A DNA stretch of 64,000 bases, taken from contig NIVC01000774.1 of assembly GCA_002269645.1 (NCBI GenBank), forward strand, positions 1 to 64,000. The letters are read 5' to 3'. The number at the start of each line of letters is the position of its first letter. Position 1 is the first letter of the stretch. The stretch is from Macrostomum lignano (Eukaryota). The notes below the pieces were generated by a model, which searched no databases, was not told the origin of the DNA, and saw only the letters and a list, made by a program, of their open reading frames with translations. This document shows positions 18,701-44,549 of this stretch, in pieces. The translations under genes were made by a program, and so were the position numbers.

Positions 18701-19293
18701 ATTAAGGTGAAGCTTTTGTTTTTATCCTTTTTGTGTTTAAAATTTAGTGTCAAGAAGTTTTTATAATGTTTGAATGATTCTGTAACATTGTATTGTGTAT
18801 CTAGTGACTTTTTGTAAGCTGTTAATAATCCACCAGAAGCTCTGCCAATGAATTTACAGCCTTTTTTGTTTGCAGGCTTTTGGTATGTCATGTAGTTTTC
18901 AGACAGGTTGTTGATTTTGAGTCGCTTGTTTTCATTTTTTGTGTCTATTATCCAAGTTTCTTGAAGGCAGAGAATATTATTCTTAAAAATTGATTCAGTT
19001 TCCAGTAGTTCAAGTTTGGGAATCATCACAGAGTCTTTTATTGTGTAAAGTCCATTGATATTCCAGCTGCTAATAGTAAATTTTTCTTTATCAATTTTTT
19101 GGATAATATTAAATTCAAGGAGTTTTGATTTGATATTGTAAGGAATTTTTTTGATCTTTTGAGCATTGTTATTTCTAATAGAAATGAGGTACTCTCTAGT
19201 GTATTGTATCCGCTTTTCATTTGCCTGGATAATATTTTGACTATTTTGACTATTAAGTGTTGGGGTATTTAAGTCACAGTTTACAGAGGAAGT
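15715..19293 (-). CDS. LINE ORF2: AP endonuclease, reverse transcriptase and C-terminal CCHC knuckle
   Basis: APE motifs WNINGL (19065), LCLQETW, GDFNAH, SVIDL and SDH. RT motifs QYGF, FVDYEKAFD, GVLQGNPLS, LFADD and YLG. LFDALVTPVITYGCELWG is RTEX-like, and CKMC..HYLTECP is the knuckle. The frame is open from 19293 (manual translation); the first ATG is at 19026. Confidence 0.9.
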   Translation of the reverse strand, partial: TSSVNCDLNTPTLNSQNSQNIIQANEKRIQYTREYLISIRNNNAQKIKKIPYNIKSKLLEFNIIQKIDKEKFTISSWNINGLYTIKDSVMIPKLELLETESIFKNNILCLQETWIIDTKNENKRLKINNLSENYMTYQKPANKKGCKFIGRASGGLLTAYKKSLDTQYNVTESFKHYKNFLTLNFKHKKDKNKSFTLINSYIPPLSSKYYEEENWEQLTILLDAYHSEENIFLIGDFNAHINNTSYIDLNSIYTTRAKNISLTRQSQDKKTCKNGRLLNQITDSYNLHLINGRSLSDTNGEFTFLSKSGSSVIDLCFVSTSLLQHLEDFKVKNHTYFSDHNQIVLSLSSEFTEEITETKQATNNSKMRYRVLKKSHKPNLQQEKHINNFANDLKNMNDKITNLDIQNPAFINELSRKVRQIQNNITVEIKNPLCSTLPRFLKDLRNAARHACRRYKTFPTPNNLSSKVQLKKAYEKKLTSWKFETTLCADNMINQAFIQNDTKQLWNLLKTPNPSNNRVTIDEKFIIHFQNLVTEQDSSIRLSYNLHLDNPILADLEDFNAPFTKEEVIKHIKKLKTDKAPGHDKVYVETLKYLENELADLLCSLFNEALKQGTFPTSWITNTLHPIYKNKGSSADPNNYRGICIQPILGKLFCQIIKSRLENLAYANNLISKYQYGFKPNHSTIDQCFNLYNIINQSIYNKEELFIGFVDYEKAFDSLNQPTLWHKTDNQGIKGQMTELIKNMHKNACFILKNDDDDDETQPIPISKGVLQGNPLSTILFELYIDDIVEYLELSSARRSLTRSAFPLILLFADDQAILAKNKDELQDTFTTMENYCKQNYLKVNASKTKFMQGNTRQKNDTESIATKIYYDNQEIEEVNEFKYLGIIFEPKNSFKKCIEHQTKQGYTAMFSLLHRVKNMSLDITLIRRLFDALVTPVITYGCELWGPLATMSDTKAIDNIQLKFYKYLLNLPKFASNSVVSSELELTPISQRIAKTYLIYWLKIRHKKLCQTTLEIFYSNTGQKNPWKMNVLKKLESIDLKALTEDKLSQSFNNEKYLVKKHLKIHRERELSQKLENQQHIKLYKNAYLYKKICRPDLSDFFPCTFRNKKFLTTLLKLKCEITPNFFSQEPCKMCGARNGSDILHYLTECPQTEEIRKKYFCQYLLNSNQIHKIGYATNEKKSQKRAHWCS

Positions 19294-20139
19294 TCAGTAG
19301 GTTTTAAAAAAAAAACTTTTAATGAAGGGAACTCCCCTCTTATAGCCAATTCGGATGTTTTTCTCACCATTTTCTTGACGAGTCTTAAGCTCTTTAACAA
19401 TCTTCTGCTTAAATGCCCGTTCCTTTTCTGTTAAGTCGTTCTCAATCCGAATACGGGAGTAGGCAGAGCCAGTTTCGCGCAGGTTTCTCAGATTACCGAA
19501 GAAGGCCGCTTTGTCGCTATCGTTGACCAGCCGAACAACGAGGGGCCTTGGTCGATTGCTGAGAGGTTGTTCGCGACCGATACGCCTGGTGGCGACAATT
19601 GGGACAGTTGCGGGGGACACTTTGAGCCCATCCTGCATAAAGTCCTCGAGCTTAGCGTCTTCTTGGAGTCCAAAAACTATGATGTTATTCTTCTTTATAC
19701 CGCGCTGCCTGACTTCCTCCACGATTTCATCAAAGCTGATGTCGTAGGTGACAGTTTGCTTCCCGCTCTCAATCGACTCTAGCTCTTCTATGCGTTCTTC
19801 GAGGGCCGTCAGCTTGACTTTGAGGTCTTTAAGCAGCTCCACGCTGTTAAGTAGCGCGCGGGCATGGGTCTTGCAATCTCGGCAAGTCCATATGAGACCA
19901 TTATCGCTAGGGCCATTTGCGATGGCGGTGAAAATTGGCTTTGCTAGGCCGGAGCAGGACTGGTGGCACCAGCGGTGACAGCTTTCGCATTGAATGCCTT
20001 CGTGCACTTCGTCGTTGCAGGCTAGGCAGCTGCCATCAACAGTCTCTCGCCTTGATTTCGCGTTCGGTGGAAGGGAGATGCCTGTTGGGGATGCTTCTTG
20101 TTCCCCAACGTTGTTCTTTCGTTTGCCTTTTTGTGACAT
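19294..20139 (-). CDS. LINE ORF1: PHD finger, coiled coil and RRM-like domain, 281 aa
   Basis: CLAC..IQCESCHRWCHQSC..WTCRDC (PHD), a heptad-rich LKDLKVKLTALEERIEELE segment, and NNIIVFGLQE..RPRPLVVRL..IENDLT, typical of LINE ORF1 RRM-like domains. Confidence 0.85.
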   Translation of the reverse strand: MSQKGKRKNNVGEQEASPTGISLPPNAKSRRETVDGSCLACNDEVHEGIQCESCHRWCHQSCSGLAKPIFTAIANGPSDNGLIWTCRDCKTHARALLNSVELLKDLKVKLTALEERIEELESIESGKQTVTYDISFDEIVEEVRQRGIKKNNIIVFGLQEDAKLEDFMQDGLKVSPATVPIVATRRIGREQPLSNRPRPLVVRLVNDSDKAAFFGNLRNLRETGSAYSRIRIENDLTEKERAFKQKIVKELKTRQENGEKNIRIGYKRGVPFIKSFFFKTY

Positions 20140-27351: not shown

Positions 27352-28719
27352 ATGTACTTCGTTCGCGCTTACGATCACGAGGATCATCGGTATCGAACTG
27401 ACTATCGCGGTCAAACGGTGGTTCCAAGTTTCACTCTTGAATGTCAGGAAGATCACAGCTGTTACTTGGAAGGCTGTCAAAGAGTTGTAATCAACGTGTC
27501 AGGTGAAGTATTTGAGACGCAGTTAAAAACGCTCAATCGTTATCCGAACACTCTGCTTGGCAATGAGGCGAAACGCCTGGCCTATTGGGATCGCGCTCGA
27601 TGTCATTTCTTTTTCGACCGTCATCGACTCTCGTTTCCCGCCATATTGAACTTCTACCAGACTGGCGGAAAGCTGCGCAAGCCGCACGAAGTGCCAGAGG
27701 AGATCTTCTACGATGAATTGAAATTCTTTGAAATTGACGAAAGCGTCATCCGCGACTTTTTGCTAACAGAAGGCTACACAATGCAAACTGTGCGCACAGT
27801 TGCGCAAACGAATTGGCGCACTCGGCTTTTCTCAGCGTTTGAATATCCAGATTCTTCGTTATTTGCTAGAACCGTAGCAATGTTTAATGTGGCTGTTATT
27901 GCTCTAAGCATAGCGCTATTCTGCTTAGAAACTCTGCCAGCGAAATCTTCTCCAAAGTGTCCAACCCTCGTATCTGCCAAGCAACAGGGCCAATATCAGA
28001 CTTTGGTTGCACCAGTGCCAACAACTACGCCAATTCAGATTTCTCAGCCGTCGAAAACCTACGGATTTAGTTGGTTCTTCATCTTAGAGACGCTCTGCGT
28101 ACTGTGGTTCGGTTTTGAGTTCGCCATCCGACTAGTAACATATCCTTTTCCTCGAAAAGCGTTTATGCTTTCCTTAGCGAATTGGCTCGATTTGGCCAGT
28201 ATATTGCCGTTTATAGGATCCTCAATAATCCTGCACTTCACTGTGGACTGCTATGACCAGTGCCAGAAGGGCTCCATATTTCTCAATCTGCTTCGCTTTC
28301 TAAGAGTGTTTCGGATATTCAAGTTTTATAAATACGTCACTGGAATGAAAATTCTTGCTCGCACTCTGCGCATGAGTTTTCGCGAGATGACAATGTTTAT
28401 ATTATTTTTAACCATATGCATAGTACTATTCGCCACGGCAATTTACTTTGCTGAAACTGGTAACGACCGTCTGCAGTTCAACAGCATACCTGACTCATTC
28501 TGGTGGGCCATCATCAGCATGTGTACAGTCGGCTATGGCGACTATGTCCCGCGTAGTCTACCAGGAAAGCTTGTTGGCAGCATCTGTGTAGTAGCTGGCG
28601 TGATGACTATTGCCCTGCCAGTGCCGGTTATTGTCACAAACTTTAACATAGTATATCGTCAAACACTACAGAAGCGATTTCGGCCAGAGCTGACTAGGGA
28701 GAAGCAGATACCGGTGTAG
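27352..28719 (+). CDS. Shaker/Kv1-family voltage-gated potassium channel, intronless, 455 aa
   Basis: A Kv1-type T1 domain (RVVINVSGEVFETQLKTL..FFFDRHR..FYQTGGKLRKP), S1-S6, S4 LRFLRVFRIFK, pore WWAIISMCTVGYGD and S6 gate ALPVPVIV. Confidence 0.95.
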   Translation: MYFVRAYDHEDHRYRTDYRGQTVVPSFTLECQEDHSCYLEGCQRVVINVSGEVFETQLKTLNRYPNTLLGNEAKRLAYWDRARCHFFFDRHRLSFPAILNFYQTGGKLRKPHEVPEEIFYDELKFFEIDESVIRDFLLTEGYTMQTVRTVAQTNWRTRLFSAFEYPDSSLFARTVAMFNVAVIALSIALFCLETLPAKSSPKCPTLVSAKQQGQYQTLVAPVPTTTPIQISQPSKTYGFSWFFILETLCVLWFGFEFAIRLVTYPFPRKAFMLSLANWLDLASILPFIGSSIILHFTVDCYDQCQKGSIFLNLLRFLRVFRIFKFYKYVTGMKILARTLRMSFREMTMFILFLTICIVLFATAIYFAETGNDRLQFNSIPDSFWWAIISMCTVGYGDYVPRSLPGKLVGSICVVAGVMTIALPVPVIVTNFNIVYRQTLQKRFRPELTREKQIPV

Positions 28720-28923
28720 TCCATCTAGGAACCCTTGACAGTGAAAAATTTTATTTAGTTAAATATTTGACGGCTATGTTAATTCTTCATAGTAAATTAT
28801 GCCACAGCCTGTTTATTACCAGGTGCAGTTTTATTGAACCCCGTGTACTTTGTTTCTGCAATCCTGAGCAAGCTTTAGCAGCCATAGAAATTTCATAAAT
28901 AGCCAAATCAATCCATTGTCATC

Positions 28924-33099: not shown

Positions 33100-34510
33100 T
33101 ACAGAATCGCCCTAAAATACTTTACAATCACCATAAACCACTCTAGCAGCCGTAGAGAATCATCCTAAACCCTTTGAGTCGCTTTAAACCCCTCTAGAAT
33201 CCACCCTGAACCCCTTTGAGATTCATTCTAAACCCCTTGAGAATCACCCTAAACCCATTGAGAATCACCCGAAGCCCCTAGAGAATCAGCCTAAACCCAT
33301 TGAGAATCACCCGAAACCCCCAGAGAATCAGCCTAAACCCCTTGAGAATCATTCTAAACCCCTTGAGAATCACCATAAATTCTTTTAGAATCACCCTAAA
33401 CCCTTTGAGAATCATCCTAAACGCCTTTGGTAATCCCCTAAACCCCTCGAGAATCGCCCTAAACCCCTTGAGATTACCCTTTGAGAATCATTCTAAACCC
33501 CTCGAGAATCTCCATAAACCCCTCGAGAATCGCCCTAAACCCCTTGAGATTACCCTTTGAGAATCATCCTAAACGCCTTTGGTAAACCCCTCTAGAATCG
33601 CCCTAAACCCCTTGAGATTACCCTTTGAGAATCATCCTAAACGCCTTTGGTAAACCCCTCTAGAATCGCCCTAAACCCCTGGAGATTACCCTTTGAGAAT
33701 CATTCTAAACCCCTTGAGAATCAGCCTAAACCCCTTGAGAATCATTCTAAACCCCTTGAGAATCACCATAAATTCTTTTAGAATCACCCTAAACCCTTTG
33801 AGAATCATCCTAAACGCCTTTGGTAATCCCCTAAACCCCTCGAGAATCGCCCTAAACCCCTTGAGATTACCCTTTGAGAATCATTCTAAACCCCTCGAGA
33901 ATCTCCATAAACCCCTCGAGAATCGCCCTAAACCCCTTGAGATTACCCTTTGAGAATCATCCTAAACGCCTTTGGTAAACCCCTCTAGAATCGCCCTAAA
34001 CCCCTTGAGATTACCCTTTGAGAATCATTCTAAACCCCTTGAGAATCAGCCTAAACCCCTTGAGAATCATTCTAAACCCCTTGAGAATCACCATAAATTC
34101 TTTTAGAATCACCCTAAACCCTTTGAGAATCATCCTAAACGCCTTTGGTAATCCCCTAAACCCCTCGAGAATCGCCCTAAACCCCTTGAGATTACCCTTT
34201 GAGAATCATTCTAAACCCCTCAAGAATCTCCATAAACCCCTCGAGAATCGCCCTAAACCCCTTGAGATTACCCTTTGAGAATCATCCTAAACGCCTTTGG
34301 TAAACCCCTCTAGAATCGCCCTAAACCCCTTGAGATTACCCTTTGAGAATCATCCTAAACGCCTTTGGTAAACCCCTCTAGAATCGCCCTAAACCCCTTG
34401 AGATTACCCTTTGAGAATCATTCTAAACCCCTTGAGAATCACCCTAAACCCCTCGAGAATCTCCATAAACACTTTGAGAATCACCCTAAACCATTTGAGG
34501 ATCACCCTAT
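33100..34510. repeat. About 21-22-bp minisatellite with higher-order duplications
   Basis: The unit is about GAGAATCGCCCTAAACCCCTT. Near-identical blocks of about 260 bp start at 33300, 33693 and 34018. Confidence 0.93.
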
Positions 34511-35093: not shown

Positions 35094-35319
35094 AATTTTT
35101 GTCCGAGTTCCTGCTGGTTTTTCATCTGGGTGACTCAATCTGTTATTAACTTCCATTTGAAGTTTTTACATTGTTAAAAGGAGCTGAGAGTATCGAATGC
35201 ATGTGTTTTTCAATATCGGAGAGTTTTATCGAATACTGTGAACTGGTTAACCTCTGACTGGAAAATCTGTGAAAACTCAGAGTTGCTATGTGAGGACATG
35301 GGGCAAGTATAGGAGTTTC

Positions 35320-36249
35320 GAGAGTCCATGATTGCAATGCAGCAGTCAGTAGTCAGACACTGGAGCTTCCAGTCCAGATAGTTTAGGAGTCCTTGATTGA
35401 AATTCAGCAGCCAGTAGCCAGACACTGGAGCTTCCAGTCCAGATAGTTTAGGAGTCCTTGATTGAAATTCAGCAGCCAGTAGCCAGACACTGGAGCTTCC
35501 AGTCCAGATAGTTTAGGAGTCCTTGATTGAAATTCAGCAGCCAGTAGCCAGACACTGGAGCTTCCAGTCCAGATAGTTTAGGAGTCCTTGATTGAAATTC
35601 AGCAGCCAGTAGTCAGACACTGGAGCTTCCAGTCCAGATGTTTAGGAGTCCATGATTGCAATGCAGCAGCCAGTAGTCAGACACTGGAGCTTCCAGTCCA
35701 GATAGTTTAGGAGTCCTTAATTGAAATTCAGCAGCCAGTAGCCAGACACTGGAGCTTCCAGTCCAGATAGTTTAGGAGTCCTTAATTGAAATTCAGCAGC
35801 CAGTAGTCAGACACTGGAGCTTCCAGTCCAGATGTTTAGGAGTCCATGATTGCAATGCAGCAGCCAGTAGTCAGACACTGGAGCTTCCAGTCCAGATAGT
35901 TTAGGAGTCCTTGATTGAAATTCAGCAGCCAGTAGTCAGACACTGGAGCTTCCAGTCCAGATGTTTAGGAGTCCATGATTGCAATGCAGCAGCCAGTAGT
36001 CAGACACTGGAGCTTCCAGTCCAGATAGTTTAGGAGTCCTTGATTGAAATTCAGCAGCCAGTAGTCAGACACTGGAGCTTCCAGTCCAGATAGTTTAGGA
36101 GTCCTTGATTGAAATTCAGCAGCCAGTAGTCAGACACTGGAGCTTCCAGTCCAGATGTTTAGGAGTCCATGATTGCAATGCAGCAGCCAGTAGTCAGACA
36201 CTGGAGCTTCCAGTCCAGATAGTTCAGGGGTCCATGATTGCAATGCAGC
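35320..36249. repeat. 64/65-bp two-variant minisatellite (about 14 copies) directly upstream of NOSIP
   Basis: A shared core CAGACACTGGAGCTTCCAGTCCAGAT is followed by variant A (AGTTTAGGAGTCCTT(G/A)ATTGAAATTCAG) or variant B (GTTTAGGAGTCCATGATTGCAATGCAG). Confidence 0.95.
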
Positions 36250-36307
36250 AACGATTAGTCAGGCGCAAAGCACACAATCGCACAAATTCATGCATGCGTG
36301 ACCAGTA

Positions 36308-37150
36308 ATGACGCGGCACTCCCGCAACAACACATCGCACAGTGTGTACACTTACCACGAAAAGCGTCGCGACGCCCAGGCCTCAGAGTACGGCACTAAG
36401 GAGGTCCGAGTCGGTCGGGACAGCGTCAAGAAATTCGACTGCTGCTGCCTGACTAATCAGCCGTGCAAAGATCCGGTGGTGACGCCTCAGGGCTACCTAT
36501 ACGACCGCGAGGCCATCCTGCAGTACATGCTGCAGCAGAGGCAGGAGCTGGTTAAGCAGGCCAAAGCGCGCGAACGCCAGCTGGCGGCCGAGGCGGCGCG
36601 CCAGGCGCAGGAACAGAGCAAGCAAGAGCACGAGACTGAGGTTAGCAAATACCTGAGCGCTAATACCGTGGCCAGCAGTCCGGATAAGAAGAAATCCGGC
36701 AGCGCCGAGCAGCCGGTCACGGCCTCCAACTTTTGGATACCCTTGGCCACGCCGTCCTCTTCTTCGGCGTCGTCCTCATCGACGGCGGCAAAGCCGGCAC
36801 CGGCCCGACCGGACGACAAGGTCCGCTGTCCGATGTCTAAGAAGCCCCTGAGGCTGAAGGATCTGATTTCCATTCAATTTAAGCCCGCGCCCGGCGGCGG
36901 CTACCTGTGCGCCCTGACTGGCGATGTGTTGAACGATTCGACTCCGTTGTGCGTCATCCGGCCGTCCGGCTGCGTGGTCACCAAGGAGGCCGTCGACAAG
37001 CTGGTGCGGCCCGAGATGCGCGATCCGATCAGCGGGCGCGAGCTGACCCAGGCTGACATTGTGCAGCTGCAGAGGGGCGCTAGCGGCTTCGCTGGCAGCG
37101 GGCACAACCTGCTGTCTAAGCACACTGGCGTGGTTATGCATGTTGCTTGA
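36308..37150 (+). CDS. NOSIP: Nitric oxide synthase-interacting protein (U-box/RING-like), intronless, 280 aa
   Basis: MTRHSRNNT..VYTYHEKRRD..YGT..GRDSVKKFDCCCLTNQPCKDPVVTPQGYLYDREAILQY and the C-terminal CPMSKKPLRLKDLI..QRGASGFAGSG are characteristic of NOSIP. Confidence 0.97.
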   Translation: MTRHSRNNTSHSVYTYHEKRRDAQASEYGTKEVRVGRDSVKKFDCCCLTNQPCKDPVVTPQGYLYDREAILQYMLQQRQELVKQAKARERQLAAEAARQAQEQSKQEHETEVSKYLSANTVASSPDKKKSGSAEQPVTASNFWIPLATPSSSSASSSSTAAKPAPARPDDKVRCPMSKKPLRLKDLISIQFKPAPGGGYLCALTGDVLNDSTPLCVIRPSGCVVTKEAVDKLVRPEMRDPISGRELTQADIVQLQRGASGFAGSGHNLLSKHTGVVMHVA

Positions 37151-37261
37151 CTAATACTCTGCGCTTAACTGGCTTGCATTGTGGATTCTGGCTCCTCTCA
37201 TCCTTAATCTGGGACTTTGTGTTGTTTAATGTAATGCTAATCTAAGTCGGACTCTGAGAAT

Positions 37262-37372
37262 GATCCTAAGACCGACTCTAAGGCTGACCTATAGACTGAC
37301 TATAAGACTGACTTCAAGACTGACCTTTAGACTGACTCTATGACTGACTCTAAGGCTGACCCTAAGGCTGGG
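37262..37372. repeat. Short 12-bp degenerate repeat in the putative NOSIP 3' UTR
   Basis: Variants of (T)AAGACTGACTC occur in tandem. Confidence 0.8.
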
Positions 37373-37473
37373 TTACGAGTACTATCAGGATGGGTGTTGT
37401 TAAGGCAACCCAGAATTTCAATTAACTTGCGATTGTCAACAGTTTGTATATGAATGGTATTAATCTCTGTACA

Positions 37474-37479
37474 ATTAAA
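37474..37479 (+). terminator. Putative NOSIP polyadenylation signal (ATTAAA)
   Basis: ATTAAA lies 324 nt after the NOSIP stop and is followed by a T-rich tract at 37551-37564. Confidence 0.4.
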
Positions 37480-37651
37480 TTTTAAATACACTTGCAATTG
37501 ACGGCAAATCCCATTTACTAAACATTTTACTACGCAGTAAAATATAAAAATTTTTTTTTTATTTGGCATTGTGGCCACATTTGACTGCCTAGTAACTGTA
37601 ATTGCACACCTGTGCCAACCATTGTCAGTAAAACTGCCAACCAAACCGCAG

Positions 37652-38977
37652 GCGCTAACGGTATTCGGTCTGACTGCTCTGGAGTTGGCGCTGTGCTTAG
37701 CCGGCTGCCTCTGTCGGCTGGCTCTGCGCGCCTGGCTAACGCCGCAGTCCGTGCGTGCCTGGTCCAGCTCACCTGTGGAGTCCTGGACAGCCGTGCGCGA
37801 GTACCTGGCCCTCCGTCGGGCCGGCGTCGATCCGTACGACGGCAGCGCGTTGCACTTGCCGCCGCTGTCGCTCCGGCTGATGCTGGCCGCCGACAGTCTG
37901 CTTGGCGGCGGCGACGGCGACCGAGCCTGGCTGGTGCTGCTCGCCCTGGAGCTGGCCGGCTGTCTGGCGCTGAAACGGTTGCTGCGCGAATTCGGCGCTT
38001 ACACCCTGCGCCGACAGGCGGCCAACGTTGCCAGCTATTGCTCCGCCAGCGTCCCCATGCTGCTGTCCGGGGACAGCCTGCGCCGACTGCGGCTTCCCGT
38101 CATTGCCGCCTACTGGTTCAATCCCTACAGTCTGGTGGCCTCAGTTGCCGAGGCAACCACGCCGCTTAGTAACCTGGTTGTCCTGCTCTGCCTAGCCGAG
38201 CTGTGCCGCGGTCGGGTCGGCTTCGCCGCCGCCTTGTGCGCGGCCGCCGCCTATCACGGCCTGTACCCGCTGTGCCTGATTGTGCCCATCTGCCTGGCCG
38301 GCCCGGCCCGGCCCGCCCTGCTGGCCTTTGCTGGCACGCTGGCCTGCCTGCTGGCAACTTCCTACATGCTGACTGGCGGCAGCTGGGCCTACCTGCAGTC
38401 TGTGTACGCCTTTCACGCTCTGGCGCCGGATCACACGCCCGGCTTCAGCCTGTCCTGGTACCTATTCTGCGAGGCGTTCGATCATTTTCGCAGCCTATTC
38501 CAGGCTGTGTTCCAGGCCAATCTGGTGTGCGTACTGGCCCCGCTGGCTATCAGATTCCGCTCCGATCCCTGCTTCCTAGCCGTGATCTGCTGGGCCTACA
38601 CGGCTATATTCAAGCCCTACTGCTGCGTGTCTGAGCAGGCCCTGATAGCCTGTGTGTTCATCATGCACGCTCAGCTGCATGCTCACATGCGCCGAGCTCT
38701 GCTAGCTATCATACTACTAATAGTAGCATTTGTACTGGCGCCAATCATGCACCATCTGTGGCTGTATCCGGGCAGTGCAAATTCCAATTTCTACTTTGCC
38801 ATCTCGCTGTTGCACTGCACAGCTATGGCCCTGCTGCTGTATCTATTCTGCATTGCCTATTTGAAACGGGAATTCCTACTGCATCACGGGCCCCAGCCGT
38901 TGAAGTTTAGCGACGGCACCGAGGCTAAAATTGTGCTGCAGGCGCCAACAGTAAAACTGCTGTTTGTCAACAATTGA
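37652..38977 (+). CDS. PIGU: GPI transamidase subunit PIG-U; the coding exon lacks its own ATG and starts after the acceptor CCGCAG|GCG
   Basis: SSPVESW..GVDPYDGSALHLPPL, YWFNPYSL, PDHTPGFSLSWYLFCEAFDHFRSLF, FKPY, HHLWLYPGSANSNFYFAISL and DGTEAKIVL all match PIG-U. The ORF-track start at 37571 is GTG, the frame is closed by TAA at 37538, and the first in-frame ATG lies after conserved motifs. Confidence 0.93.
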   Translation, partial: ALTVFGLTALELALCLAGCLCRLALRAWLTPQSVRAWSSSPVESWTAVREYLALRRAGVDPYDGSALHLPPLSLRLMLAADSLLGGGDGDRAWLVLLALELAGCLALKRLLREFGAYTLRRQAANVASYCSASVPMLLSGDSLRRLRLPVIAAYWFNPYSLVASVAEATTPLSNLVVLLCLAELCRGRVGFAAALCAAAAYHGLYPLCLIVPICLAGPARPALLAFAGTLACLLATSYMLTGGSWAYLQSVYAFHALAPDHTPGFSLSWYLFCEAFDHFRSLFQAVFQANLVCVLAPLAIRFRSDPCFLAVICWAYTAIFKPYCCVSEQALIACVFIMHAQLHAHMRRALLAIILLIVAFVLAPIMHHLWLYPGSANSNFYFAISLLHCTAMALLLYLFCIAYLKREFLLHHGPQPLKFSDGTEAKIVLQAPTVKLLFVNN

Positions 38978-39269: not shown

Positions 39270-39275
39270 AATAAA
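39270..39275 (+). terminator. Putative PIGU polyadenylation signal (AATAAA)
   Basis: A canonical hexamer about 290 nt after the stop, with T-rich sequence downstream. Confidence 0.45.
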
Positions 39276-39349
39276 TATACAGCAACTAGTACAAGTTCAT
39301 GCCTTTCTTGCCTCTTTGTGTTGCTCTTTATTTTACTTTATAGGTTTCG

Positions 39350-40200
39350 CATCTAACCTTCCAGTCTCTCAGTTCTACATGCATCTAACCTTCCAGTCTC
39401 TCAGTTCTACATGCATCCAACCTTCCAGTCTCTCAGTTCTACATGCATCTAACCTTCCAGTCTCTCAGTTCTACATGCATCTAACCTTCCAGTCTCTCAG
39501 TTCTACATGCATCTAACCTTCCAGTCTGTCAGTTCTACATGCATCTAACCTTCCAGTCTGTCAGTTGTACATGCATCTAACCTTCCAGTCTCTCAGTTGT
39601 ACATGCACCTAACCTTCCAGTCTCTCAGTTGTACATGCACCTAACCTTCCAGTCTCTCAGTTCTACATGCATCTAACCTTCCAGTCTCTCAGTTCTACAT
39701 GCATCTAACCTTCCAGTCTGTCAGTTCTACATGCATCTAACCATCCAGTCTATCAGTTCTACATGCGTCTAACCATCCAGTCTGTCAGTTCTACATGCAT
39801 CTAACCATCCAGTCTCTCAGTTCTACATGCGTCTAACCATCCAGTCTCTCAGTTCTACATGCATCTAACCATCCAGTCTCTCAGTTCTACATTCATCTAA
39901 CCTTTCAGTCTCTCAGTTCTACATTCATCTAACCTTCCAGTCTCTCAGTTCTACATGCATCTAACCTTCCAGTCTGTCAGTTCTACATGCATCTAACCAT
40001 CCAGTCTATCAGTTCTACATGCGTCTAACCATCCAGTCTGTCAGTTCTACATGCATCTAACCATCCAGTCTATCAGTCATCCAGTCATCCAGTCTATGAT
40101 AGGGTCTATCAGTTCTACATGCATTTAACCTTCCAGTCTCTCAGTTGTACAGTCATCTAACCTAACCCTCCAGTTTCTCAGTTCTACATGCATCTAACCC
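39350..40200. repeat. 32-bp minisatellite (about 26 copies) between PIGU and FAAH2
   Basis: The unit is CATCTAACCTTCCAGTCTCTCAGTTCTACATG. Confidence 0.96.
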
Positions 40201-40274
40201 TCTAGTCATGCGATTAAAAGAAATCGCATGAAACTGTTTGCCAGTAGGTTAATCCGCTAATCCCCGCTGGTCTC

Positions 40275-42086
40275 ATGGCCAACCCATCTGCAGCCAGCCG
40301 CGACAGTCGCGTCGCTCTCAGCGACCGCCTGATTAGCATGGTGATGCGCGTTCTGCTTGGCACCATCCGCCCCCTGACCGGTATCTGCTTTGAAATTGTT
40401 TACCGACTGTTTGTGAAGCGTCGCCGAGTGCCGCCGCTGGAGAGCCCCCTGCTGGGCATGTCGGCCGTGGCCCTGGCTGACGCTATCAGGCGCCGCGAGG
40501 TCACCAGCGAGGCCGTGGTGCGCGCCTCCATTGATCGAATGCGTTTGGTCCATCCGATTATCAACGCCGTGGTGTGGGAGAGGTTAGCAATATCATATGC
40601 AATCTGATCTGTTATGAGCAGCTGGGCCAGGGCAGAAGTCTAAACGACGAAAAAACTGAAAGGGATTATCTGGGTCAAATAAATAAATGCCTGCTAGACA
40701 CTGTTCAGGCAAGCTCAAGCATTGGATGCTAAGTTAAATATGAGTCAACTGTCACTTTGTCGGCAATCAGTTTGTTTGCAGTCAGTCTATCGGCAGTCTG
40801 TCTGTCTGCAGTCAGTCTATCTGCAGTCTGTCTCTGCAGTCAGTCTATCGGCAGTCTGGCTATTGGCAGTCTGTCTGTCTGCAGTCAGTCTATCGGCAGT
40901 CTGTCTCTGCAGTCAGTCTATCGGCAGTCTGGCTATTGGCAGTCTGTCTGTCTGCAGTCAGTCTATCGGCAGTCTGTCTGTCTGCAGTCAGTCTATCGGC
41001 AGTCTGTCTGTCTGCAGTCAGTCTATCTGCAGTCTGGCTATTGGCAGTCTGTCTGTCTGCAGTCAGTCTATCGGCAGTCTGTCTGCAGTCAGTCTATCGG
41101 CAGTCTGTCTGCAGTCAGTCTATCGGCAGTCTGTCTGTCTGCAGTCAGTCAGTCTATCGGCAGTCTGGCTATTGGCAGTCTGTCTGTCTGCAATCGGTCT
41201 ATTGGCAGTCTGTCTTCCTGCAGTCAGTCCCAACACTGGCGGCCAGGCCAGGCCCAAAACGGCAACTATGTCCCCTTTCTCCCAGAAAGTAGTTTAACAA
41301 TTATTACGTCATCATTTGTAAGAGCCGAATAGAACATGTATTCACGTATTTATTTCTGCAGGTACGAGGCGGCCCTGCAGGACGCCAGGCGAGTTGACGC
41401 TATGCTGGACTCCGACCCGGACAATCCCGAATGGAGCCGCGAGGCCAAGCCATTCCTGGGAGTGCCGGCCACCGTGAAGGAGGCCTTCGGCTTGGTTGGT
41501 GGCACCCAGTCTGTTGGCCTGTGGCTGCGCACCAGCGTGCGCTCAGAGCGGGACGCCGTCTGCGTTGAACGAATGAAATCGGCCGGCTGCATCCCGCTGT
41601 GCCTCACCAACGTCAGCGAGCTGTGCATGTGGTGGGAGTCGCACAATCGGGTCAACGGCATCACTGGGAATCCCTACGATAGTAGGCGAATCGCCGGCGG
41701 CAGCAGCGGCGGCGAGGGCGCCAATGTGGGCGCCGGCTGCGCCCCGGTCGGCCTCGGCTCCGACATCGGCGGCAGCATCCGCATGCCGGCCTTCTTTAAC
41801 GGCGTATTCGGCCACAAGGCCACCGCCTACATGATCCCCAACGCGGGACAGTACCCCGATGCCATAGCCGAGGGCCGCTACTTCATGCTTAGCGGCCCGA
41901 TTGTAAGCCACGCCGAGGACCTGCTGCCCATGGTGCGCCTCATGGCCGGGCCCGAGAACTCCGCCCGGCTGCTCATCCGGCCGTCCGATCCCAGGCCGGA
42001 CGTGAAACGGCTCAAGATCTACTATATGGAAGGTGAGCAGGTGGCATCTGTGTCTGTCTGTCTGTTTGTCTGTCTGTCTCTGTTTT

Positions 42087-42169
<83 letters not shown>

Positions 42170-42176
42170 CTGTTTT

Positions 42177-42211
<35 letters not shown>

Positions 42212-42458
42212 TAGTGTCTCAGTGTCTGTCTGTCTGTCTGTCTGTTTGCCTATCTCTCTGTGTGTCTTCTGCCTGTCTGTCTGTCTGTTTTTGTCTGTCT
42301 CTGTCTCTTTGTCTGTTTCTGTCTCTGTCTCTTTGTCTGTCTGTCTGTCTCTTTCTCTTTGTTTCTGTCTGTCTGTCTCTGTCTCTTTGTTTCTGTCTCT
42401 TTGTTTCTGTCTGTCTGTCTGTCAACTGTTTGTCTTTGTTTTGTTTATCGATTAGTTC

Positions 42459-42489
<31 letters not shown>

Positions 42490-43162
42490 TACAAGCATTT
42501 TGCCCGTTTTTTGCTCTGTAACTCAACTGTATTGCACAAACTGGCATTCCAGTGATTCCAGTTGGATTCCAGTGTAGCAGGGCAAATTTCCCAGTGCATG
42601 ACTGACAATCTCTGGATAGTGAATTAAGTCGCGTTCTTAAACATATCCCAATCCCTTTGCTGACTCGGTAGGGTAAATTTAAGAAAACTTAAGTGCGTTT
42701 TAACGCAGAATTTACACGTTTGCCGGAACAGACATACTTGAACAGCATTTTGACCTTCTATTCTTCCTTGTTGGAGATCTGACGCTTTTTGCTACCAGAT
42801 TTTCCAGTTTGTCAGCCCTGCGTGTACGAGGAGATTTTAGTTTTAAATAATATTGAGATATGAATGATTCAAGTTTTATGTGCCTGCGGCTTTCCATTCC
42901 GGCTCTGTTAGTTCATTAGTTCGTTAGTTTTAGTTAGTTAGCTAGTTAGCTAGTTAGTTAGCTATTTAGTTAGTTAGTTTCTTAGCGAGTTAGTTAGCTA
43001 GTTATTTAGTTAGCTAGTTAGTTAGTTAGTTAGTTAGCTATTTAGTTAGTTAGCTAGTTAGCTAGTTAGTTAGCTATTTAGTTAGTTAGTCAGTTAGTTT
43101 CTTAGCTAGTTAGTTAGTTAGTTAGTTAGCTATTTAGTTAGTTAGTCAGTTAGTTTCTTAGC

Positions 43163-43225
<63 letters not shown>

Positions 43226-44549
43226 CTTGTTAGTTTGTTTGTTTGTTTCTTAGCCATTTAGTTAGTTATTTAGTTAGTTAGCTAGTTAGTTAGCTTGTTA
43301 GTTAGTTAGTTAGTTAGCTAGTTAGTTATTTTCTTAGCTAGTTAGTTAGATATTTAGTTAATTAGTTAGCTAGTTAGTTAGTTTCTTAGTTAGTTAGTTA
43401 GATAGTTAGTTAGTCACTTAGTTAGCTAGTTAGTTAGTTAGCTAGTTAGTTAGTTTCTTAGTTAGTTAGTTTCTTAGCTAGTTAGTTAGCTATTTAGTTA
43501 GTTAGTTAGCTAGTTAGTTAGCTTGTTAGTTAGTTAGTTAGTTAGTTAGTCAGTTAGTTTCTTAGCTAGTTAGTTAGATATTTAGTTAGTCAGTTAGTTA
43601 GCTAGTTAGTTAGTTTCTTAGTTAGTTAGTTTCGTAGCTAGTTAGTTAGCTAGTTAGTTACGTCAGCTTCAGACACTGCCGCGCGTTTAGGCGACAAGCG
43701 ACCCGCAAACAGTGGGGAGACAAGCAGTTATGCCCAATTTCCTGAACCCTAAGCACTCACCCGATCACGTATGCCAGGCAGTAACCTCCCAGATTCAGAC
43801 AGTACTTATACAGTGTATCAGAGTTGGTCTGTATAGGCGTTGATTGAGCTCAAAATTTACAGTCAAGGCAGGCCCTGTTGCCTCTCACAAAACAATATAG
43901 TTGCATTGAATTTGCAGACAGCGGCGACTCAATCTGGTGCTCTCCAGTTGAGCCTCGCATTCGCGAATGCATCCGCCAGGCGGCCGAGCACCTCAGAGCT
44001 GACCTCGGCCTGCCTGTACAGAAAGTGCAGCTGCGCAAACTGCGCCTATCGCCTCATCTGTGGTCAAGTAAAATGAAACTATCTGGCGAAGAGAGATTCG
44101 CTGTTCAAATGGGCGGCGGAGTCAAGCTGAACTGTTACCTGGAGCTGATCAAGTGGTGCCTATTGCGCTCGCATCACACCTTGCCAGCTATTGGGCTTGG
44201 CCTGTTCGAGCAGTTTGGCTCCGAGAATCTTGATAGGCGTCTGGCGGCCATCTGCGACCAGTTGAAGGCCGAGATGGAGGAGCTGCTGGGCGACGACGGC
44301 GTGCTCCTGTACCCGGCTCACCCCACCTCGGCTCCCTACCATCACCAGCCGCTGACTCTGCTGTTTAACTTTGCCTACACTGGCATCTTCAATGTGCTGG
44401 GCCTGCCAGCTACTAGCATCCCGATGGGCCTGGATCACAAAGGCATGCCAATTGGCCTGCAGGCTGTGGCCAATATGCACAATGATCGGTACACTCTGCT
44501 GCTGGCCGAACTGCTTGAGAACAAGTTCGGCGGCTGGGTTCGACCGTGA
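40275..44549 (+). CDS. FAAH2: Fatty-acid amide hydrolase 2-like amidase; exons 40275-40582, 41362-42032 and 43918-44549, about 536 aa
   Basis: Amidase signature [19 protein letters not shown] and [11 protein letters not shown] (Ser-cisSer-Lys triad), plus the C-terminal [24 protein letters not shown]. The splice phases (2, then 1) join in frame. Confidence 0.93.
40760..41230. repeat. About 30-bp CAGT/GTCT-based minisatellite in FAAH2 intron 1
   Basis: Variants of GTCTGTCTGCAGTCAGTCTATCGGCA. Confidence 0.92.
42050..43670. repeat. Compound microsatellites in FAAH2 intron 2: (TGTC)n 42050-42430, (AAT)n 42463-42490 and (TAGT)n 42910-43660
   Basis: Direct inspection. Confidence 0.95.

What the first reader, a model, noticed from the sequence alone, without database searches (positions are those of the whole stretch)
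37474..37700. PIGU has no start codon of its own: candidate initiation from the spliced-leader AUG
Seen: the PIGU frame is closed upstream by TAA (37538), and it contains no ATG until about residue 104 of the ORF-track translation, past the conserved SSPVESW and GVDPYDG motifs. An acceptor of the kind used elsewhere in this window (CCGCAG, 37646-37651) is followed by GCG CTA ACG exactly in frame, near the expected PIG-U N-terminus. Upstream lie a T-rich tract (37551-37564) and the putative NOSIP ATTAAA (37474). Known: flatworm SL exons end in AUG, and this AUG can act as the initiator Met (shown in Schistosoma). Inference: NOSIP-PIGU is an operon in which trans-splicing is obligatory to create the PIGU ORF (M-ALTVFGL..). 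That would tie GPI-anchor biosynthesis to SL supply. Alternatives are a cis micro-exon ending ATG|GTATTA at 37454-37462, or GTG initiation at 37571.
Basis: partly seen in the sequence, partly recalled or inferred. Interest (0 to 1): 0.8.

Follow-up and report, generated by a model that had tools for sequence, protein, structure and literature searches.

The report
ATG-less PIG-U gene started by spliced leader
In this Macrostomum lignano scaffold the GPI-transamidase subunit PIG-U has no start codon of its own and almost certainly takes it from the AUG at the end of the trans-spliced leader, a mechanism already known in flatworms, so this is a clean new example and not a new mechanism.

Summary
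The window is Macrostomum lignano Mlig_3_7 scaffold NIVC01000774.1. The PIG-U frame (Pfam E 1e-76) is closed upstream by TAA at 37538. It has no ATG in any frame from 37457 to 37879. Its first in-frame ATG (37880) lies past conserved N-terminal motifs.

The deposited RNA-seq-based gene model starts its 5'-partial CDS at 37652, the first base after CCGCAG. The two other genomic copies are also annotated as partial. The M. lignano spliced leader ends in ATG. Joining it at 37652 gives M-ALTVFGL..., which aligns with Met1 of human PIGU. This leaves 41 residues before a conserved proline, against a median of 39 in 88 homologues. GC3 jumps from 0.35 to 0.73 at the acceptor.

NOSIP and PIG-U carry locus tags of one transcriptional unit (Mlig001430 g2 and g3) and lie 501 nt apart, which supports the operon reading. 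I did not see the SL-PIGU junction or any translation evidence directly.

SL-AUG initiation is established in Schistosoma and Echinococcus, so this is a new member of a known kind.

By-product: at three neighbouring trans-splice sites the assembly carries SL 3'-end bases in place of the acceptor. This is probably an artefact of polishing with RNA-seq.

The parts
36297..37150 (+). NOSIP mRNA body. The inferred trans-splice exon starts at 36297 and the CDS is 36308-37150 with its own ATG. An SL-AUG joined at 36297 would open a 4-codon uORF (MRDQ*) whose UAA overlaps the NOSIP AUG (UAAUG).
   Evidence: Pfam zf-NOSIP E 1.2e-33. Paralogues have the consensus acceptor CTTCAG immediately before 36297, and their annotated 5'-partial CDS begins 6 nt upstream of the ATG. 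uORF translation.
36291..36296 (+). TGCATG, the last 6 nt of the SL, sits where the two paralogues have the acceptor CTTCAG. Probably an SL 'imprint' left by RNA-seq polishing.
   Evidence: Alignment A2 and the three-way locus alignment. Pilon polishing with RNA-seq is stated in PMC5730564.
37474..37479 (+). ATTAAA, the best candidate poly(A) signal of NOSIP. AGTAAA variants at 37536 and 37627 are weaker alternatives.
   Evidence: Conserved in all three copies. The cleavage site itself was not observed.
37538..37540 (+). TAA closing the PIG-U reading frame upstream. It directly follows a CAG (37535-37537).
37551..37564 (+). T-rich tract in the intercistronic region. It may be the downstream element for NOSIP 3'-end formation. 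Its length varies between copies (indels of 3 and 4 nt), so it is not coding.
   Evidence: The function is inferred.
37646..37651 (+). CCGCAG, the inferred SL trans-splice acceptor of PIG-U. Identical in all three genomic copies.
   Evidence: The annotated CDS of the window's own copy (P0005) starts at the next base. It matches 5 of 6 positions of the published trans-splice acceptor motif [T/C]TNCAG (PMC8629364).
37652..38977 (+). PIG-U coding exon: 441 codons plus TGA, no intron and no initiator ATG. With the SL the product would be M-ALTVFGLTALELALCLAGC... (442 aa).
37880..37882 (+). First genome-encoded ATG of the PIG-U frame (codon 77 of the exon). Starting here would remove the first transmembrane segment and 56 residues of the Pfam domain.
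37742..37747 (+). Second in-frame CCGCAG inside the CDS. It is a possible minor alternative acceptor (the product would start MSVRAWSSSPVESW).
   Evidence: All annotated 5' ends lie upstream of it.
39270..39275 (+). AATAAA, the candidate poly(A) signal of PIG-U. A 32-nt x 26.6 tandem repeat follows at 39349-40207.
40271..40278 (+). 5' end of the next gene, a FAAH-like amidase. The annotated CDS starts at 40278 (ANPSAAS...), directly after a genomic TCTCATG. One paralogue reads TTGCATG, the last 7 nt of the SL. The SL AUG is in frame here too.
   Evidence: Pfam Amidase.
28855..28858 (+). Trans-splice acceptor of SPC25, 65 nt upstream of its ATG (28924). The window reads TCTG, paralogue L001 reads TCAG (consensus TTTCAG) and L003 reads CATG.

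Best explanation
PIG-U is the downstream gene of a polycistronic unit in Macrostomum lignano that contains at least NOSIP and PIG-U. The flanking genes SPC25 and a FAAH-like amidase are also trans-spliced. The NOSIP mRNA is probably cleaved and polyadenylated after ATTAAA (37474). The 35-nt spliced leader CGGTCTCTTACTGCGAAGACTCAATTTATTGCATG is then joined to the acceptor CCGCAG at 37651|37652. The leader's terminal AUG lands in frame directly before GCG CTA ACG and is the only AUG for the next 228 nt. It therefore initiates translation of the full-length 442-aa protein M-ALTVFGL.... Without trans-splicing no complete PIG-U can be made from an AUG. Shown: the sequence features, the AUG-terminated SL of this species, the start of the RNA-seq-based gene model at 37652, and the fit of the N-terminus to orthologues. 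Inferred: the SL-PIGU junction itself, use of the SL AUG by ribosomes, and the poly(A) site of NOSIP.
For: 1. The window is M. lignano Mlig_3_7 scaffold NIVC01000774.1, and window coordinates equal record coordinates.
2. The M. lignano SL ends in ATG, and 30-39% of genes carry it (PMC8629364; PMC5730564).
3. The deposited annotation comes from RNA-seq. Its 5' ends were cut at peaks of SL-trimmed reads, and ORFs were called by TransDecoder. In the window the 5'-partial CDS P0005 begins ALTVFGL at 37652, the first base after CAG. The frame is open back to 37541, so a transcript model reaching further upstream would have given a longer partial ORF.
4. The other two genomic copies are also annotated as partial. 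They start 3 and 36 nt downstream and never upstream.
5. No ATG occurs in any frame from 37457 to 37879.
6. In the HMMER alignment to human PIGU, residue 11 of the exon pairs with human residue 12. Extended without gaps, the SL Met therefore falls on human Met1.
7. In 88 homologues that start with Met, the number of residues before the conserved Pro of the SP..SW motif has a median of 39 (IQR 36-45). The SL-Met model gives 41 and the GTG model gives 67.
8. GC3 is 0.35 in 37541-37651, like intergenic DNA, and 0.73 in 37652-37762, like the CDS.
9. NOSIP is BOX15_Mlig001430g2 and PIG-U is BOX15_Mlig001430g3, so both carry the same transcriptional-unit prefix. The stop-to-acceptor distance is 501 nt, under the 1-kb operon criterion of PMC8629364.
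10. The neighbouring genes show SL 3'-end bases written into the assembly exactly at their acceptors. This shows that SL-bearing RNA exists for SPC25, NOSIP and the amidase.
11. SL-AUG initiation is established in flatworms. In S. mansoni the SL AUG is in frame in 28% of trans-spliced transcripts, and more than 40 cDNAs need it (Cheng et al. 2006, cited in PMC9851317). Use is conserved in Echinococcus (PMC3510090).
Against: No read, EST or protein with the junction ...TTGCATG|GCGCTAACGG could be retrieved. The protein collection holds only the three partial NCBI models, and a metagenome scan found nothing. The three annotated 5' ends are not identical (offsets 0, +3 and +36 nt), so not every model boundary is an exact SL peak. 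The acceptor lacks a pyrimidine tract and matches the published motif at only 5 of 6 positions. Unlike its three neighbours, the PIG-U acceptor carries no SL imprint, so there is no embedded RNA trace for this gene. The context of the SL AUG has U at -3 (G at +4), which is weak by vertebrate rules. Translation was not tested.
Confidence: 0.8

Rival explanations
1. A cis-spliced upstream exon supplies the ATG and is spliced to the same acceptor at 37651. One candidate is the micro-exon ending ATG|GTATTA at 37454-37462, but the exon could lie elsewhere.
For: ATG|GTATTA exists at 37454-37462 and is kept in the paralogues. In flatworms, acceptors are often shared between cis- and trans-splicing (PMC12582326).
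Against: None of the three RNA-seq-based gene models contains an upstream exon, and all are flagged 5'-partial. The candidate lies inside the NOSIP 3' UTR, upstream of its ATTAAA. GTATTA departs from the M. lignano donor consensus GT[G/A]AG at positions +4 and +5.
Confidence: 0.05
2. Non-AUG initiation on an unspliced or polycistronic RNA, at GTG 37571 or another near-cognate codon.
For: The frame is open from 37541, and GTG 37571 is in frame.
Against: The 27 extra codons have non-coding composition (GC3 0.35 against 0.73). They would leave 67 residues before the conserved Pro, against a median of 39 in homologues. The annotated transcripts start downstream of 37571. One copy has a non-synonymous change there, and the copies differ by indels just upstream.
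Confidence: 0.03
3. Translation starts at the first genomic ATG (37880) and gives an N-terminally truncated PIG-U, or the gene copies are decaying.
For: 37880 is in frame. It is the next AUG that leaky scanning would meet, because no out-of-frame AUG intervenes. The SL AUG has a weak -3 base.
Against: A start at 37880 would delete the first transmembrane segment and the conserved SP..SW and G.PY.G motifs, which is 56 residues of the Pfam domain. All three copies keep the 76 upstream codons open, with coding-like GC3. The Pfam match is full-length.
Confidence: 0.05
4. The SL is joined mainly at a different AG, for example the second in-frame CCGCAG at 37742-37747. In that case 37652 is only the end of read coverage.
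For: A second CCGCAG lies in frame 96 nt downstream. The annotated starts differ between copies.
Against: All three annotated starts lie upstream of 37748, and one is exactly at 37652. The three AGs upstream of 37650 are each followed by TAA, so the SL AUG there would be followed at once by a stop. The N-terminal length fits 37652.
Confidence: 0.05

Closest known systems
Flatworm mRNAs that use the spliced leader's 3'-terminal AUG as initiator methionine (Cheng, Cohen, Ndegwa & Davis 2006, J Biol Chem 281:733; Schistosoma; extended to Echinococcus in PMC3510090)
   Same: The SL ends in ...UUGCAUG. The acceptor puts that AUG in frame with a conserved ORF that has no AUG of its own at the orthologous N-terminus. 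The result is a full-length protein.
   Different: The host is a free-living, early-branching rhabditophoran, not a neodermatan parasite. The gene (PIG-U) has not been reported in this class as far as my searches show. Translation from the SL AUG has not been tested in this species. In the papers I could read (Wasik et al. 2015 was not held), it is mentioned only as likely (PMC10468722).
SL-resolved operons of M. lignano (Wudarski et al. 2017, PMC5730564; Ustyantsev & Berezikov 2021, PMC8629364) and of C. elegans
   Same: Same-strand neighbours and a short intercistronic spacer: 501 nt from stop to acceptor, and about 170 nt from ATTAAA to acceptor. The downstream gene is trans-spliced, and both genes were cut from one transcriptional unit.
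   Different: There is a single SL type and no SL2-like specialisation. The upstream gene NOSIP is also trans-spliced. The spacers around the pair are inflated by tandem repeats.
slORFs (ORFs created by SL addition; slORFfinder, PMC9851317)
   Same: The start codon is supplied by the leader, not by the gene.
   Different: Here the leader-started ORF is the main conserved ORF, not an alternative or upstream ORF. In the same window the SL AUG creates true short uORFs on NOSIP (MRDQ*) and SPC25 (MQS*).

Membership tests
PIG-U / GAB1 (CDC91) subunit of GPI transamidase | Full-length match to Pfam PF06728 and homology to human PIGU of the solved GPI transamidase complex | tested here: met
   PF06728 E 1.3e-76, model positions 6-377 of 378. 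7wld_U and 8imx_U E 2e-51, and yeast GAB1 9ub7_B E 5e-33. 1076 homologues at E<=0.001.
SL-AUG-initiated flatworm mRNA | The species' spliced leader ends in AUG | tested here: met
   The SL is CGGTCTCTTACTGCGAAGACTCAATTTATTGCATG (PMC8629364; PMC5173321). No SL RNA gene lies in the window.
SL-AUG-initiated flatworm mRNA | The mRNA is SL trans-spliced at a defined acceptor | tested here: inconclusive
   Indirect only. The RNA-seq-derived gene model starts at 37652, right after CCGCAG, and is 5'-partial in all three copies. The pipeline cuts at peaks of SL reads. No junction read was seen.
SL-AUG-initiated flatworm mRNA | The SL AUG is in frame with the main ORF with no intervening stop | tested here: met
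   ATG + GCG CTA ACG... reads MALTVFGLTALELALCLAGCL and continues to the TGA at 38975-38977.
SL-AUG-initiated flatworm mRNA | No genomic AUG can give the conserved N-terminus | tested here: met
   No ATG in any frame from 37457 to 37879. The first in-frame ATG is 76 codons into the exon. Length to the conserved Pro is 41 against a median of 39. The SL Met aligns with human Met1.
SL-AUG-initiated flatworm mRNA | Ribosomes initiate at the SL AUG | not testable with these tools
   This needs initiation-site ribosome profiling, a reporter assay or N-terminal proteomics.
M. lignano operon (criteria of PMC8629364) | Adjacent same-strand genes, downstream gene trans-spliced, repeat-adjusted intergenic distance below 1 kb | tested here: met
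   NOSIP stop 37150 to acceptor 37652 is 501 nt. Both genes are on the + strand. The trans-splicing status is inferred as in the row on the defined acceptor.
M. lignano operon (criteria of PMC8629364) | One precursor transcript spans both genes | tested here: inconclusive
   Locus tags Mlig001430g2 (NOSIP) and Mlig001430g3 (PIG-U) share one transcriptional-unit prefix. The naming rule is in PMC5730564. The precursor reads themselves were not seen.

The most novel reading that the evidence does not exclude
Obligate dependence on the leader's AUG is not a peculiarity of parasitic flatworms. It is already common in the early-branching free-living Macrostomum. In this one 12-kb stretch the SL AUG is in frame on two of four consecutive trans-spliced genes: it is obligatory for PIG-U and optional for the amidase. 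If so, the universal conservation of the SL 3' AUG across flatworms would be maintained by many essential housekeeping genes that have lost their own start codons. A large share of the '5'-partial' proteins in the M. lignano annotation would then in fact be complete once the leader Met is added.
Probability: 0.5. Interest if true: 0.45.

Novelty: new member of a known kind. Interest (0 to 1): 0.3.

Why it matters
This is a clean case of a conserved, presumably essential single-exon gene in a free-living model flatworm that cannot make its full-length protein from any AUG of its own. It would make a convenient test substrate for SL-AUG initiation in a species where transgenesis works.

It also has a practical consequence. 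Gene models flagged 'partial' at the 5' end in M. lignano may be complete apart from the leader-encoded Met. Conversely, some genomic ATGs at gene starts in the Mlig_3_7 assembly may be leader bases written into the assembly by RNA-seq polishing.

It does not point to a new mechanism. Nor does it indicate a special regulatory link between GPI anchoring and SL supply.

Tried and rejected
- **Junction evidence.** The 5.8-billion-protein collection holds only the three NCBI partial models and no M-ALTVFGL protein or transcript fragment. An exact scan of metagenome contigs for the first 31 nt of the exon found nothing.
- **Gene identifiers in the literature.** Mlig001430, Mlig025826, PIGU and NOSIP were absent from the full-text library and from the held supplements.
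- **Papers not held.** Cheng et al. 2006 and Wasik et al. 2015 are not held. Cheng et al. is cited through PMC9851317, PMC3510090 and PMC12582326.
- **SL RNA gene in the window.** None, even with up to 3 mismatches. TTGCATG is not enriched window-wide: 11 found against 14 expected.
- **Other gene starts.** Exact look-ups of two guessed products, INCENP-like and Kv channel, were not on record. Searches failed on my wrong minus-strand coordinates.
- **'Decoy' idea.** Each of the three AGs upstream of the acceptor is followed by TAA. The AGs upstream of the NOSIP and amidase acceptors show no such pattern. Two of the three sites are AGTAAA, a poly(A)-signal variant. I treat this as unexplained, not functional.
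- **Intercistronic RNA structure.** Only modestly more stable than shuffles (z -2.2), so I draw no conclusion.
- **Multiple alignment of N-termini.** MAFFT scattered the terminal Met residues. I rely on the count of residues before the conserved Pro instead.
Full report
**Identity of the window.** The PIG-U ORF retrieves three near-identical NCBI proteins of Macrostomum lignano. The one identical to the window (P0005) lies on NIVC01000774.1 of assembly GCA_002269645.1 (Mlig_3_7). Its first base is record position 37652, so window coordinates equal record coordinates. Two further copies lie on NIVC01003183.1 (locus L001) and NIVC01001558.1 (locus L003). This fits the known partial genome duplication of the DV1 line (PMC8629364). 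Gene order on the + strand is SPC25, NOSIP, PIG-U, a FAAH-like amidase, and a 2OG-Fe(II) oxygenase.

**Check of the observation.** Every coordinate is right:
- ATTAAA 37474
- TAA 37538 in the PIG-U frame
- T-rich tract 37551-37564
- GTG 37571
- CCGCAG 37646-37651, followed in frame by GCG CTA ACG
- ATG|GTATTA 37454-37462

The ORF is PIG-U: PF06728, E 1.3e-76, almost the whole model, and human PIGU of the solved GPI transamidase, E 2e-51. The upstream ORF is NOSIP. The first in-frame ATG is 37880, codon 104 of the GTG-ORF and codon 77 after the acceptor. It lies beyond SSPVESW and GVDPYDG. No ATG exists in any frame from 37457 to 37879, whereas base composition predicts about 4.3 (P about 0.014). 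The three genomic copies are identical from 37565 to beyond 37700 except for one substitution. They differ by 3- and 4-nt indels in the T tract.

**Where the transcript starts.** The deposited annotation is not ab initio. Transcriptional units were assembled from RNA-seq. Reads carrying the leader were trimmed and mapped, and the TBONE pipeline cut the units at the resulting peaks. TransDecoder then called ORFs (PMC5730564). In the window the annotated CDS is 5'-partial and starts ALTVFGL at 37652, the first base after CAG.

The frame stays open back to 37541. A transcript model reaching further upstream would therefore have produced a longer partial ORF, so the model starts at 37650-37652. 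The other two copies are also 'partial' and start 3 and 36 nt further downstream, never upstream. This scatter is what I would expect if leader-bearing reads fail to map. General RNA-seq was mapped end-to-end, so coverage would fade just inside the first exon. That explanation is my inference. No copy has an upstream exon.

**The leader supplies an in-frame AUG.** The M. lignano leader is CGGTCTCTTACTGCGAAGACTCAATTTATTGCATG (PMC8629364; PMC5173321). Joined at 37652 it reads AUG GCG CUA ACG..., that is MALTVFGLTALELALCLAGCL..., and the frame stays open to the TGA at 38975-38977.

**Does that N-terminus make sense?** Four results say it does.
- HMMER aligns residue 11 of the exon (E of ELALCL) with residue 12 of human PIGU. 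Extended without gaps, the leader Met falls on human Met1.
- I took 88 of the best-scoring PIG-U homologues from the representative library that start with Met and align at the conserved Pro of SP..SW. The number of residues before that Pro has a median of 39 (IQR 36-45). The leader-Met model gives 41, the GTG model gives 67, and the 37880 model removes the motif.
- Composition changes at the acceptor. GC3 is 0.35 in 37541-37651, like the 39% GC intergenic DNA, and 0.73 in the next 111 nt. The whole CDS has GC3 of 0.75.
- The Pfam match begins about 20 residues after the acceptor.

**Other AGs.** The three AGs between the poly(A) signal and the acceptor (37536, 37591, 37627) are each followed by TAA. 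The leader AUG there would be followed at once by a stop. A second CCGCAG at 37742-37747 is in frame but lies downstream of all annotated starts.

**Operon.** NOSIP on NIVC01001558.1 is BOX15_Mlig001430g2 and PIG-U there is BOX15_Mlig001430g3, with consecutive accessions. Under the naming rule of PMC5730564, a shared prefix means the genes were cut from the same transcriptional unit or cluster of units. The NOSIP stop is 501 nt from the acceptor, and ATTAAA is about 170 nt from it. Both are inside the 1-kb operon criterion of PMC8629364.

The PIG-U stop is 1300 nt from the amidase 5' end, or 441 nt once the 32-nt tandem repeat at 39349-40207 is removed. The amidase may therefore belong to the same unit. 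SPC25 lies 4.75 kb upstream across repeat arrays.

**An unexpected trace of the leader in the assembly.** I aligned the three 21-kb loci and found four tight substitution clusters. [quoted passage not shown]
- **NOSIP.** The paralogues read CTTCAG|CGTGACC. The window reads TGCATG|CGTGACC at 36291-36296.
- **SPC25.** L001 reads TTTCAG|CAATCC, the window reads TTTCTG| at 28855-28858, and L003 reads TTCATG|.
- **Amidase, a third case.** The window and L003 read TCTCATG|GCC, and L001 reads TTGCATG|GCC. The annotated CDS starts directly after that ATG, not at it.

The assembly was polished with Pilon using RNA-seq as well as DNA reads (PMC5730564). The simplest explanation is that reads carrying the last few leader bases mapped with mismatches and overwrote the end of the outron. 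Only the last 2-7 bases are affected, and the sequence upstream is unchanged. This argues against a biological cDNA-mediated conversion.

Two consequences follow. SPC25, NOSIP and the amidase are demonstrably joined to the leader at these sites, so PIG-U sits in a run of four trans-spliced genes. And the amidase's apparent genomic ATG (40275-40277) is probably the leader's AUG, in frame with its ORF. For the amidase the leader AUG is not obligatory, because in-frame Met codons follow at positions 22 and 24. The PIG-U acceptor is intact in all three copies, so this trace is absent for PIG-U itself.

**What the leader AUG does on the neighbours.** On NOSIP it opens MRDQ*, whose UAA overlaps the NOSIP AUG (UAAUG). 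On SPC25 it opens MQS*. PIG-U is the only one of the four genes where the leader AUG is the sole route to a full-length protein.

**Comparison with what is known.** All reported flatworm leaders end in AUG (PMC12582326). Cheng et al. 2006 showed that it serves as initiator Met in Schistosoma. [quoted passage not shown] In Echinococcus, 10 of 15 orthologues of such genes keep this use (PMC3510090). [quoted passage not shown]

The mechanism is therefore known. The new elements are the gene and an obligate case in a free-living, early-branching flatworm. The proposal that GPI-anchor synthesis is thereby tied to leader supply has no specific support, because a third of all genes are trans-spliced.

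**Rivals.**
- A cis micro-exon lies in the NOSIP 3' UTR, has a poor donor, and is absent from all three models.
- GTG initiation adds 27 codons of non-coding composition and an atypically long N-terminus, and it lies upstream of the annotated transcript.
- A start at 37880 deletes conserved sequence that all copies keep open.

Together I give these and an alternative acceptor about 0.2.

**Limits.** I saw neither the junction nor translation. The inference rests on the deposited gene models, the published pipeline, sequence logic and comparison with orthologues. The three copies are too similar to give evolutionary evidence. No other Macrostomum PIG-U was present in the collections available.

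**Verdict.** It is a new member of a known kind, of modest interest. There is a useful technical by-product: leader bases written into the Mlig_3_7 assembly at trans-splice sites.

Noticed in passing
window 36291-36296; 28855-28858; 40271-40277 (paralogous sites L001:8599-8604, L003:631-634, L001:13559-13565): At three trans-splice acceptors (NOSIP, SPC25, amidase), one or more of the three genomic copies carry the last 2-7 bases of the spliced leader (..TTGCATG) in place of a consensus ..CAG acceptor. The flanks are otherwise identical. This is probably Pilon polishing with RNA-seq overwriting the outron end. It destroys acceptors and can create false genomic ATGs.
   Followed up: partly
window 40278-40343: The amidase CDS is annotated from 40278 (ANPSAAS...), directly after the leader-like ATG. 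The leader AUG is therefore in frame here too, but in-frame Met codons at positions 22 and 24 offer alternatives.
   Followed up: partly
window 36297-36311 and 28859-28870: On NOSIP the leader AUG would open a 4-codon uORF (MRDQ*) whose stop overlaps the NOSIP AUG (UAAUG). On SPC25 it would open MQS*.
   Followed up: no
window 37535-37541, 37590-37595, 37626-37632: All three AGs between the NOSIP poly(A) signal and the PIG-U acceptor are followed by TAA (CAG|TAA, TAG|TAA, CAG|TAA). Two of them read AGTAAA, a poly(A)-signal variant. This could be chance, decoy start-stop sites or 3'-end signals.
   Followed up: partly
window 37524-37543: A perfect 8-bp palindrome with a 4-nt loop (ATTTTACT ACGC AGTAAAAT) lies just before the T-rich tract. 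The intercistronic region folds only modestly better than shuffles (z -2.2).
   Followed up: partly
window 37241-37370: A 12/36-nt tandem repeat in the NOSIP 3' UTR varies in copy number between the three genomic copies (insertions of 36 and 71 nt in L001 and L003).
   Followed up: no
window 39349-40207; 35314-36262; 33155-34509; 42907-43660; 42051-42423: Large tandem-repeat arrays fill the spacers and introns: 32 nt x 26.6 between PIG-U and the amidase, 65 nt x 14.6 ending about 35 nt before the NOSIP trans-splice site, and (GTTA)n and (TGTC)n inside the amidase gene. They inflate the intergenic distances of the putative operon.
   Followed up: no
window 15718-19029 (-): An intact 1104-aa ORF has endonuclease (Exo_endo_phos) and reverse transcriptase (RVT_1) domains, so it is a LINE-type retrotransposon. 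An adjacent 281-aa ORF (19297-20139, -) has weak zinc-finger-like matches (C1_1 and PHD, both below Pfam's gathering cutoffs).
   Followed up: no
window 27352-28716 (+): A 455-aa ORF has BTB_2 and Ion_trans domains, so it is a voltage-gated K+ channel. It is not on record with exactly this product, so the annotated model probably differs.
   Followed up: no
window 6879-8393 (-): A 505-aa ORF with an INCENP ARK-binding region has an ATG preceded by TGC (TGCATG, the last 6 nt of the leader). This may be another leader imprint. No paralogue was available for comparison.
   Followed up: no
window 40709-40713 (L002:13062): A further 5-nt substitution cluster lies in amidase intron 1. L001 has a consensus acceptor CTTTTAG|CATTGG where the window and L003 read GCTCAAG|. 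It does not look like the leader. It may be an analogous imprint from a cis-spliced exon, or a real difference.
   Followed up: no
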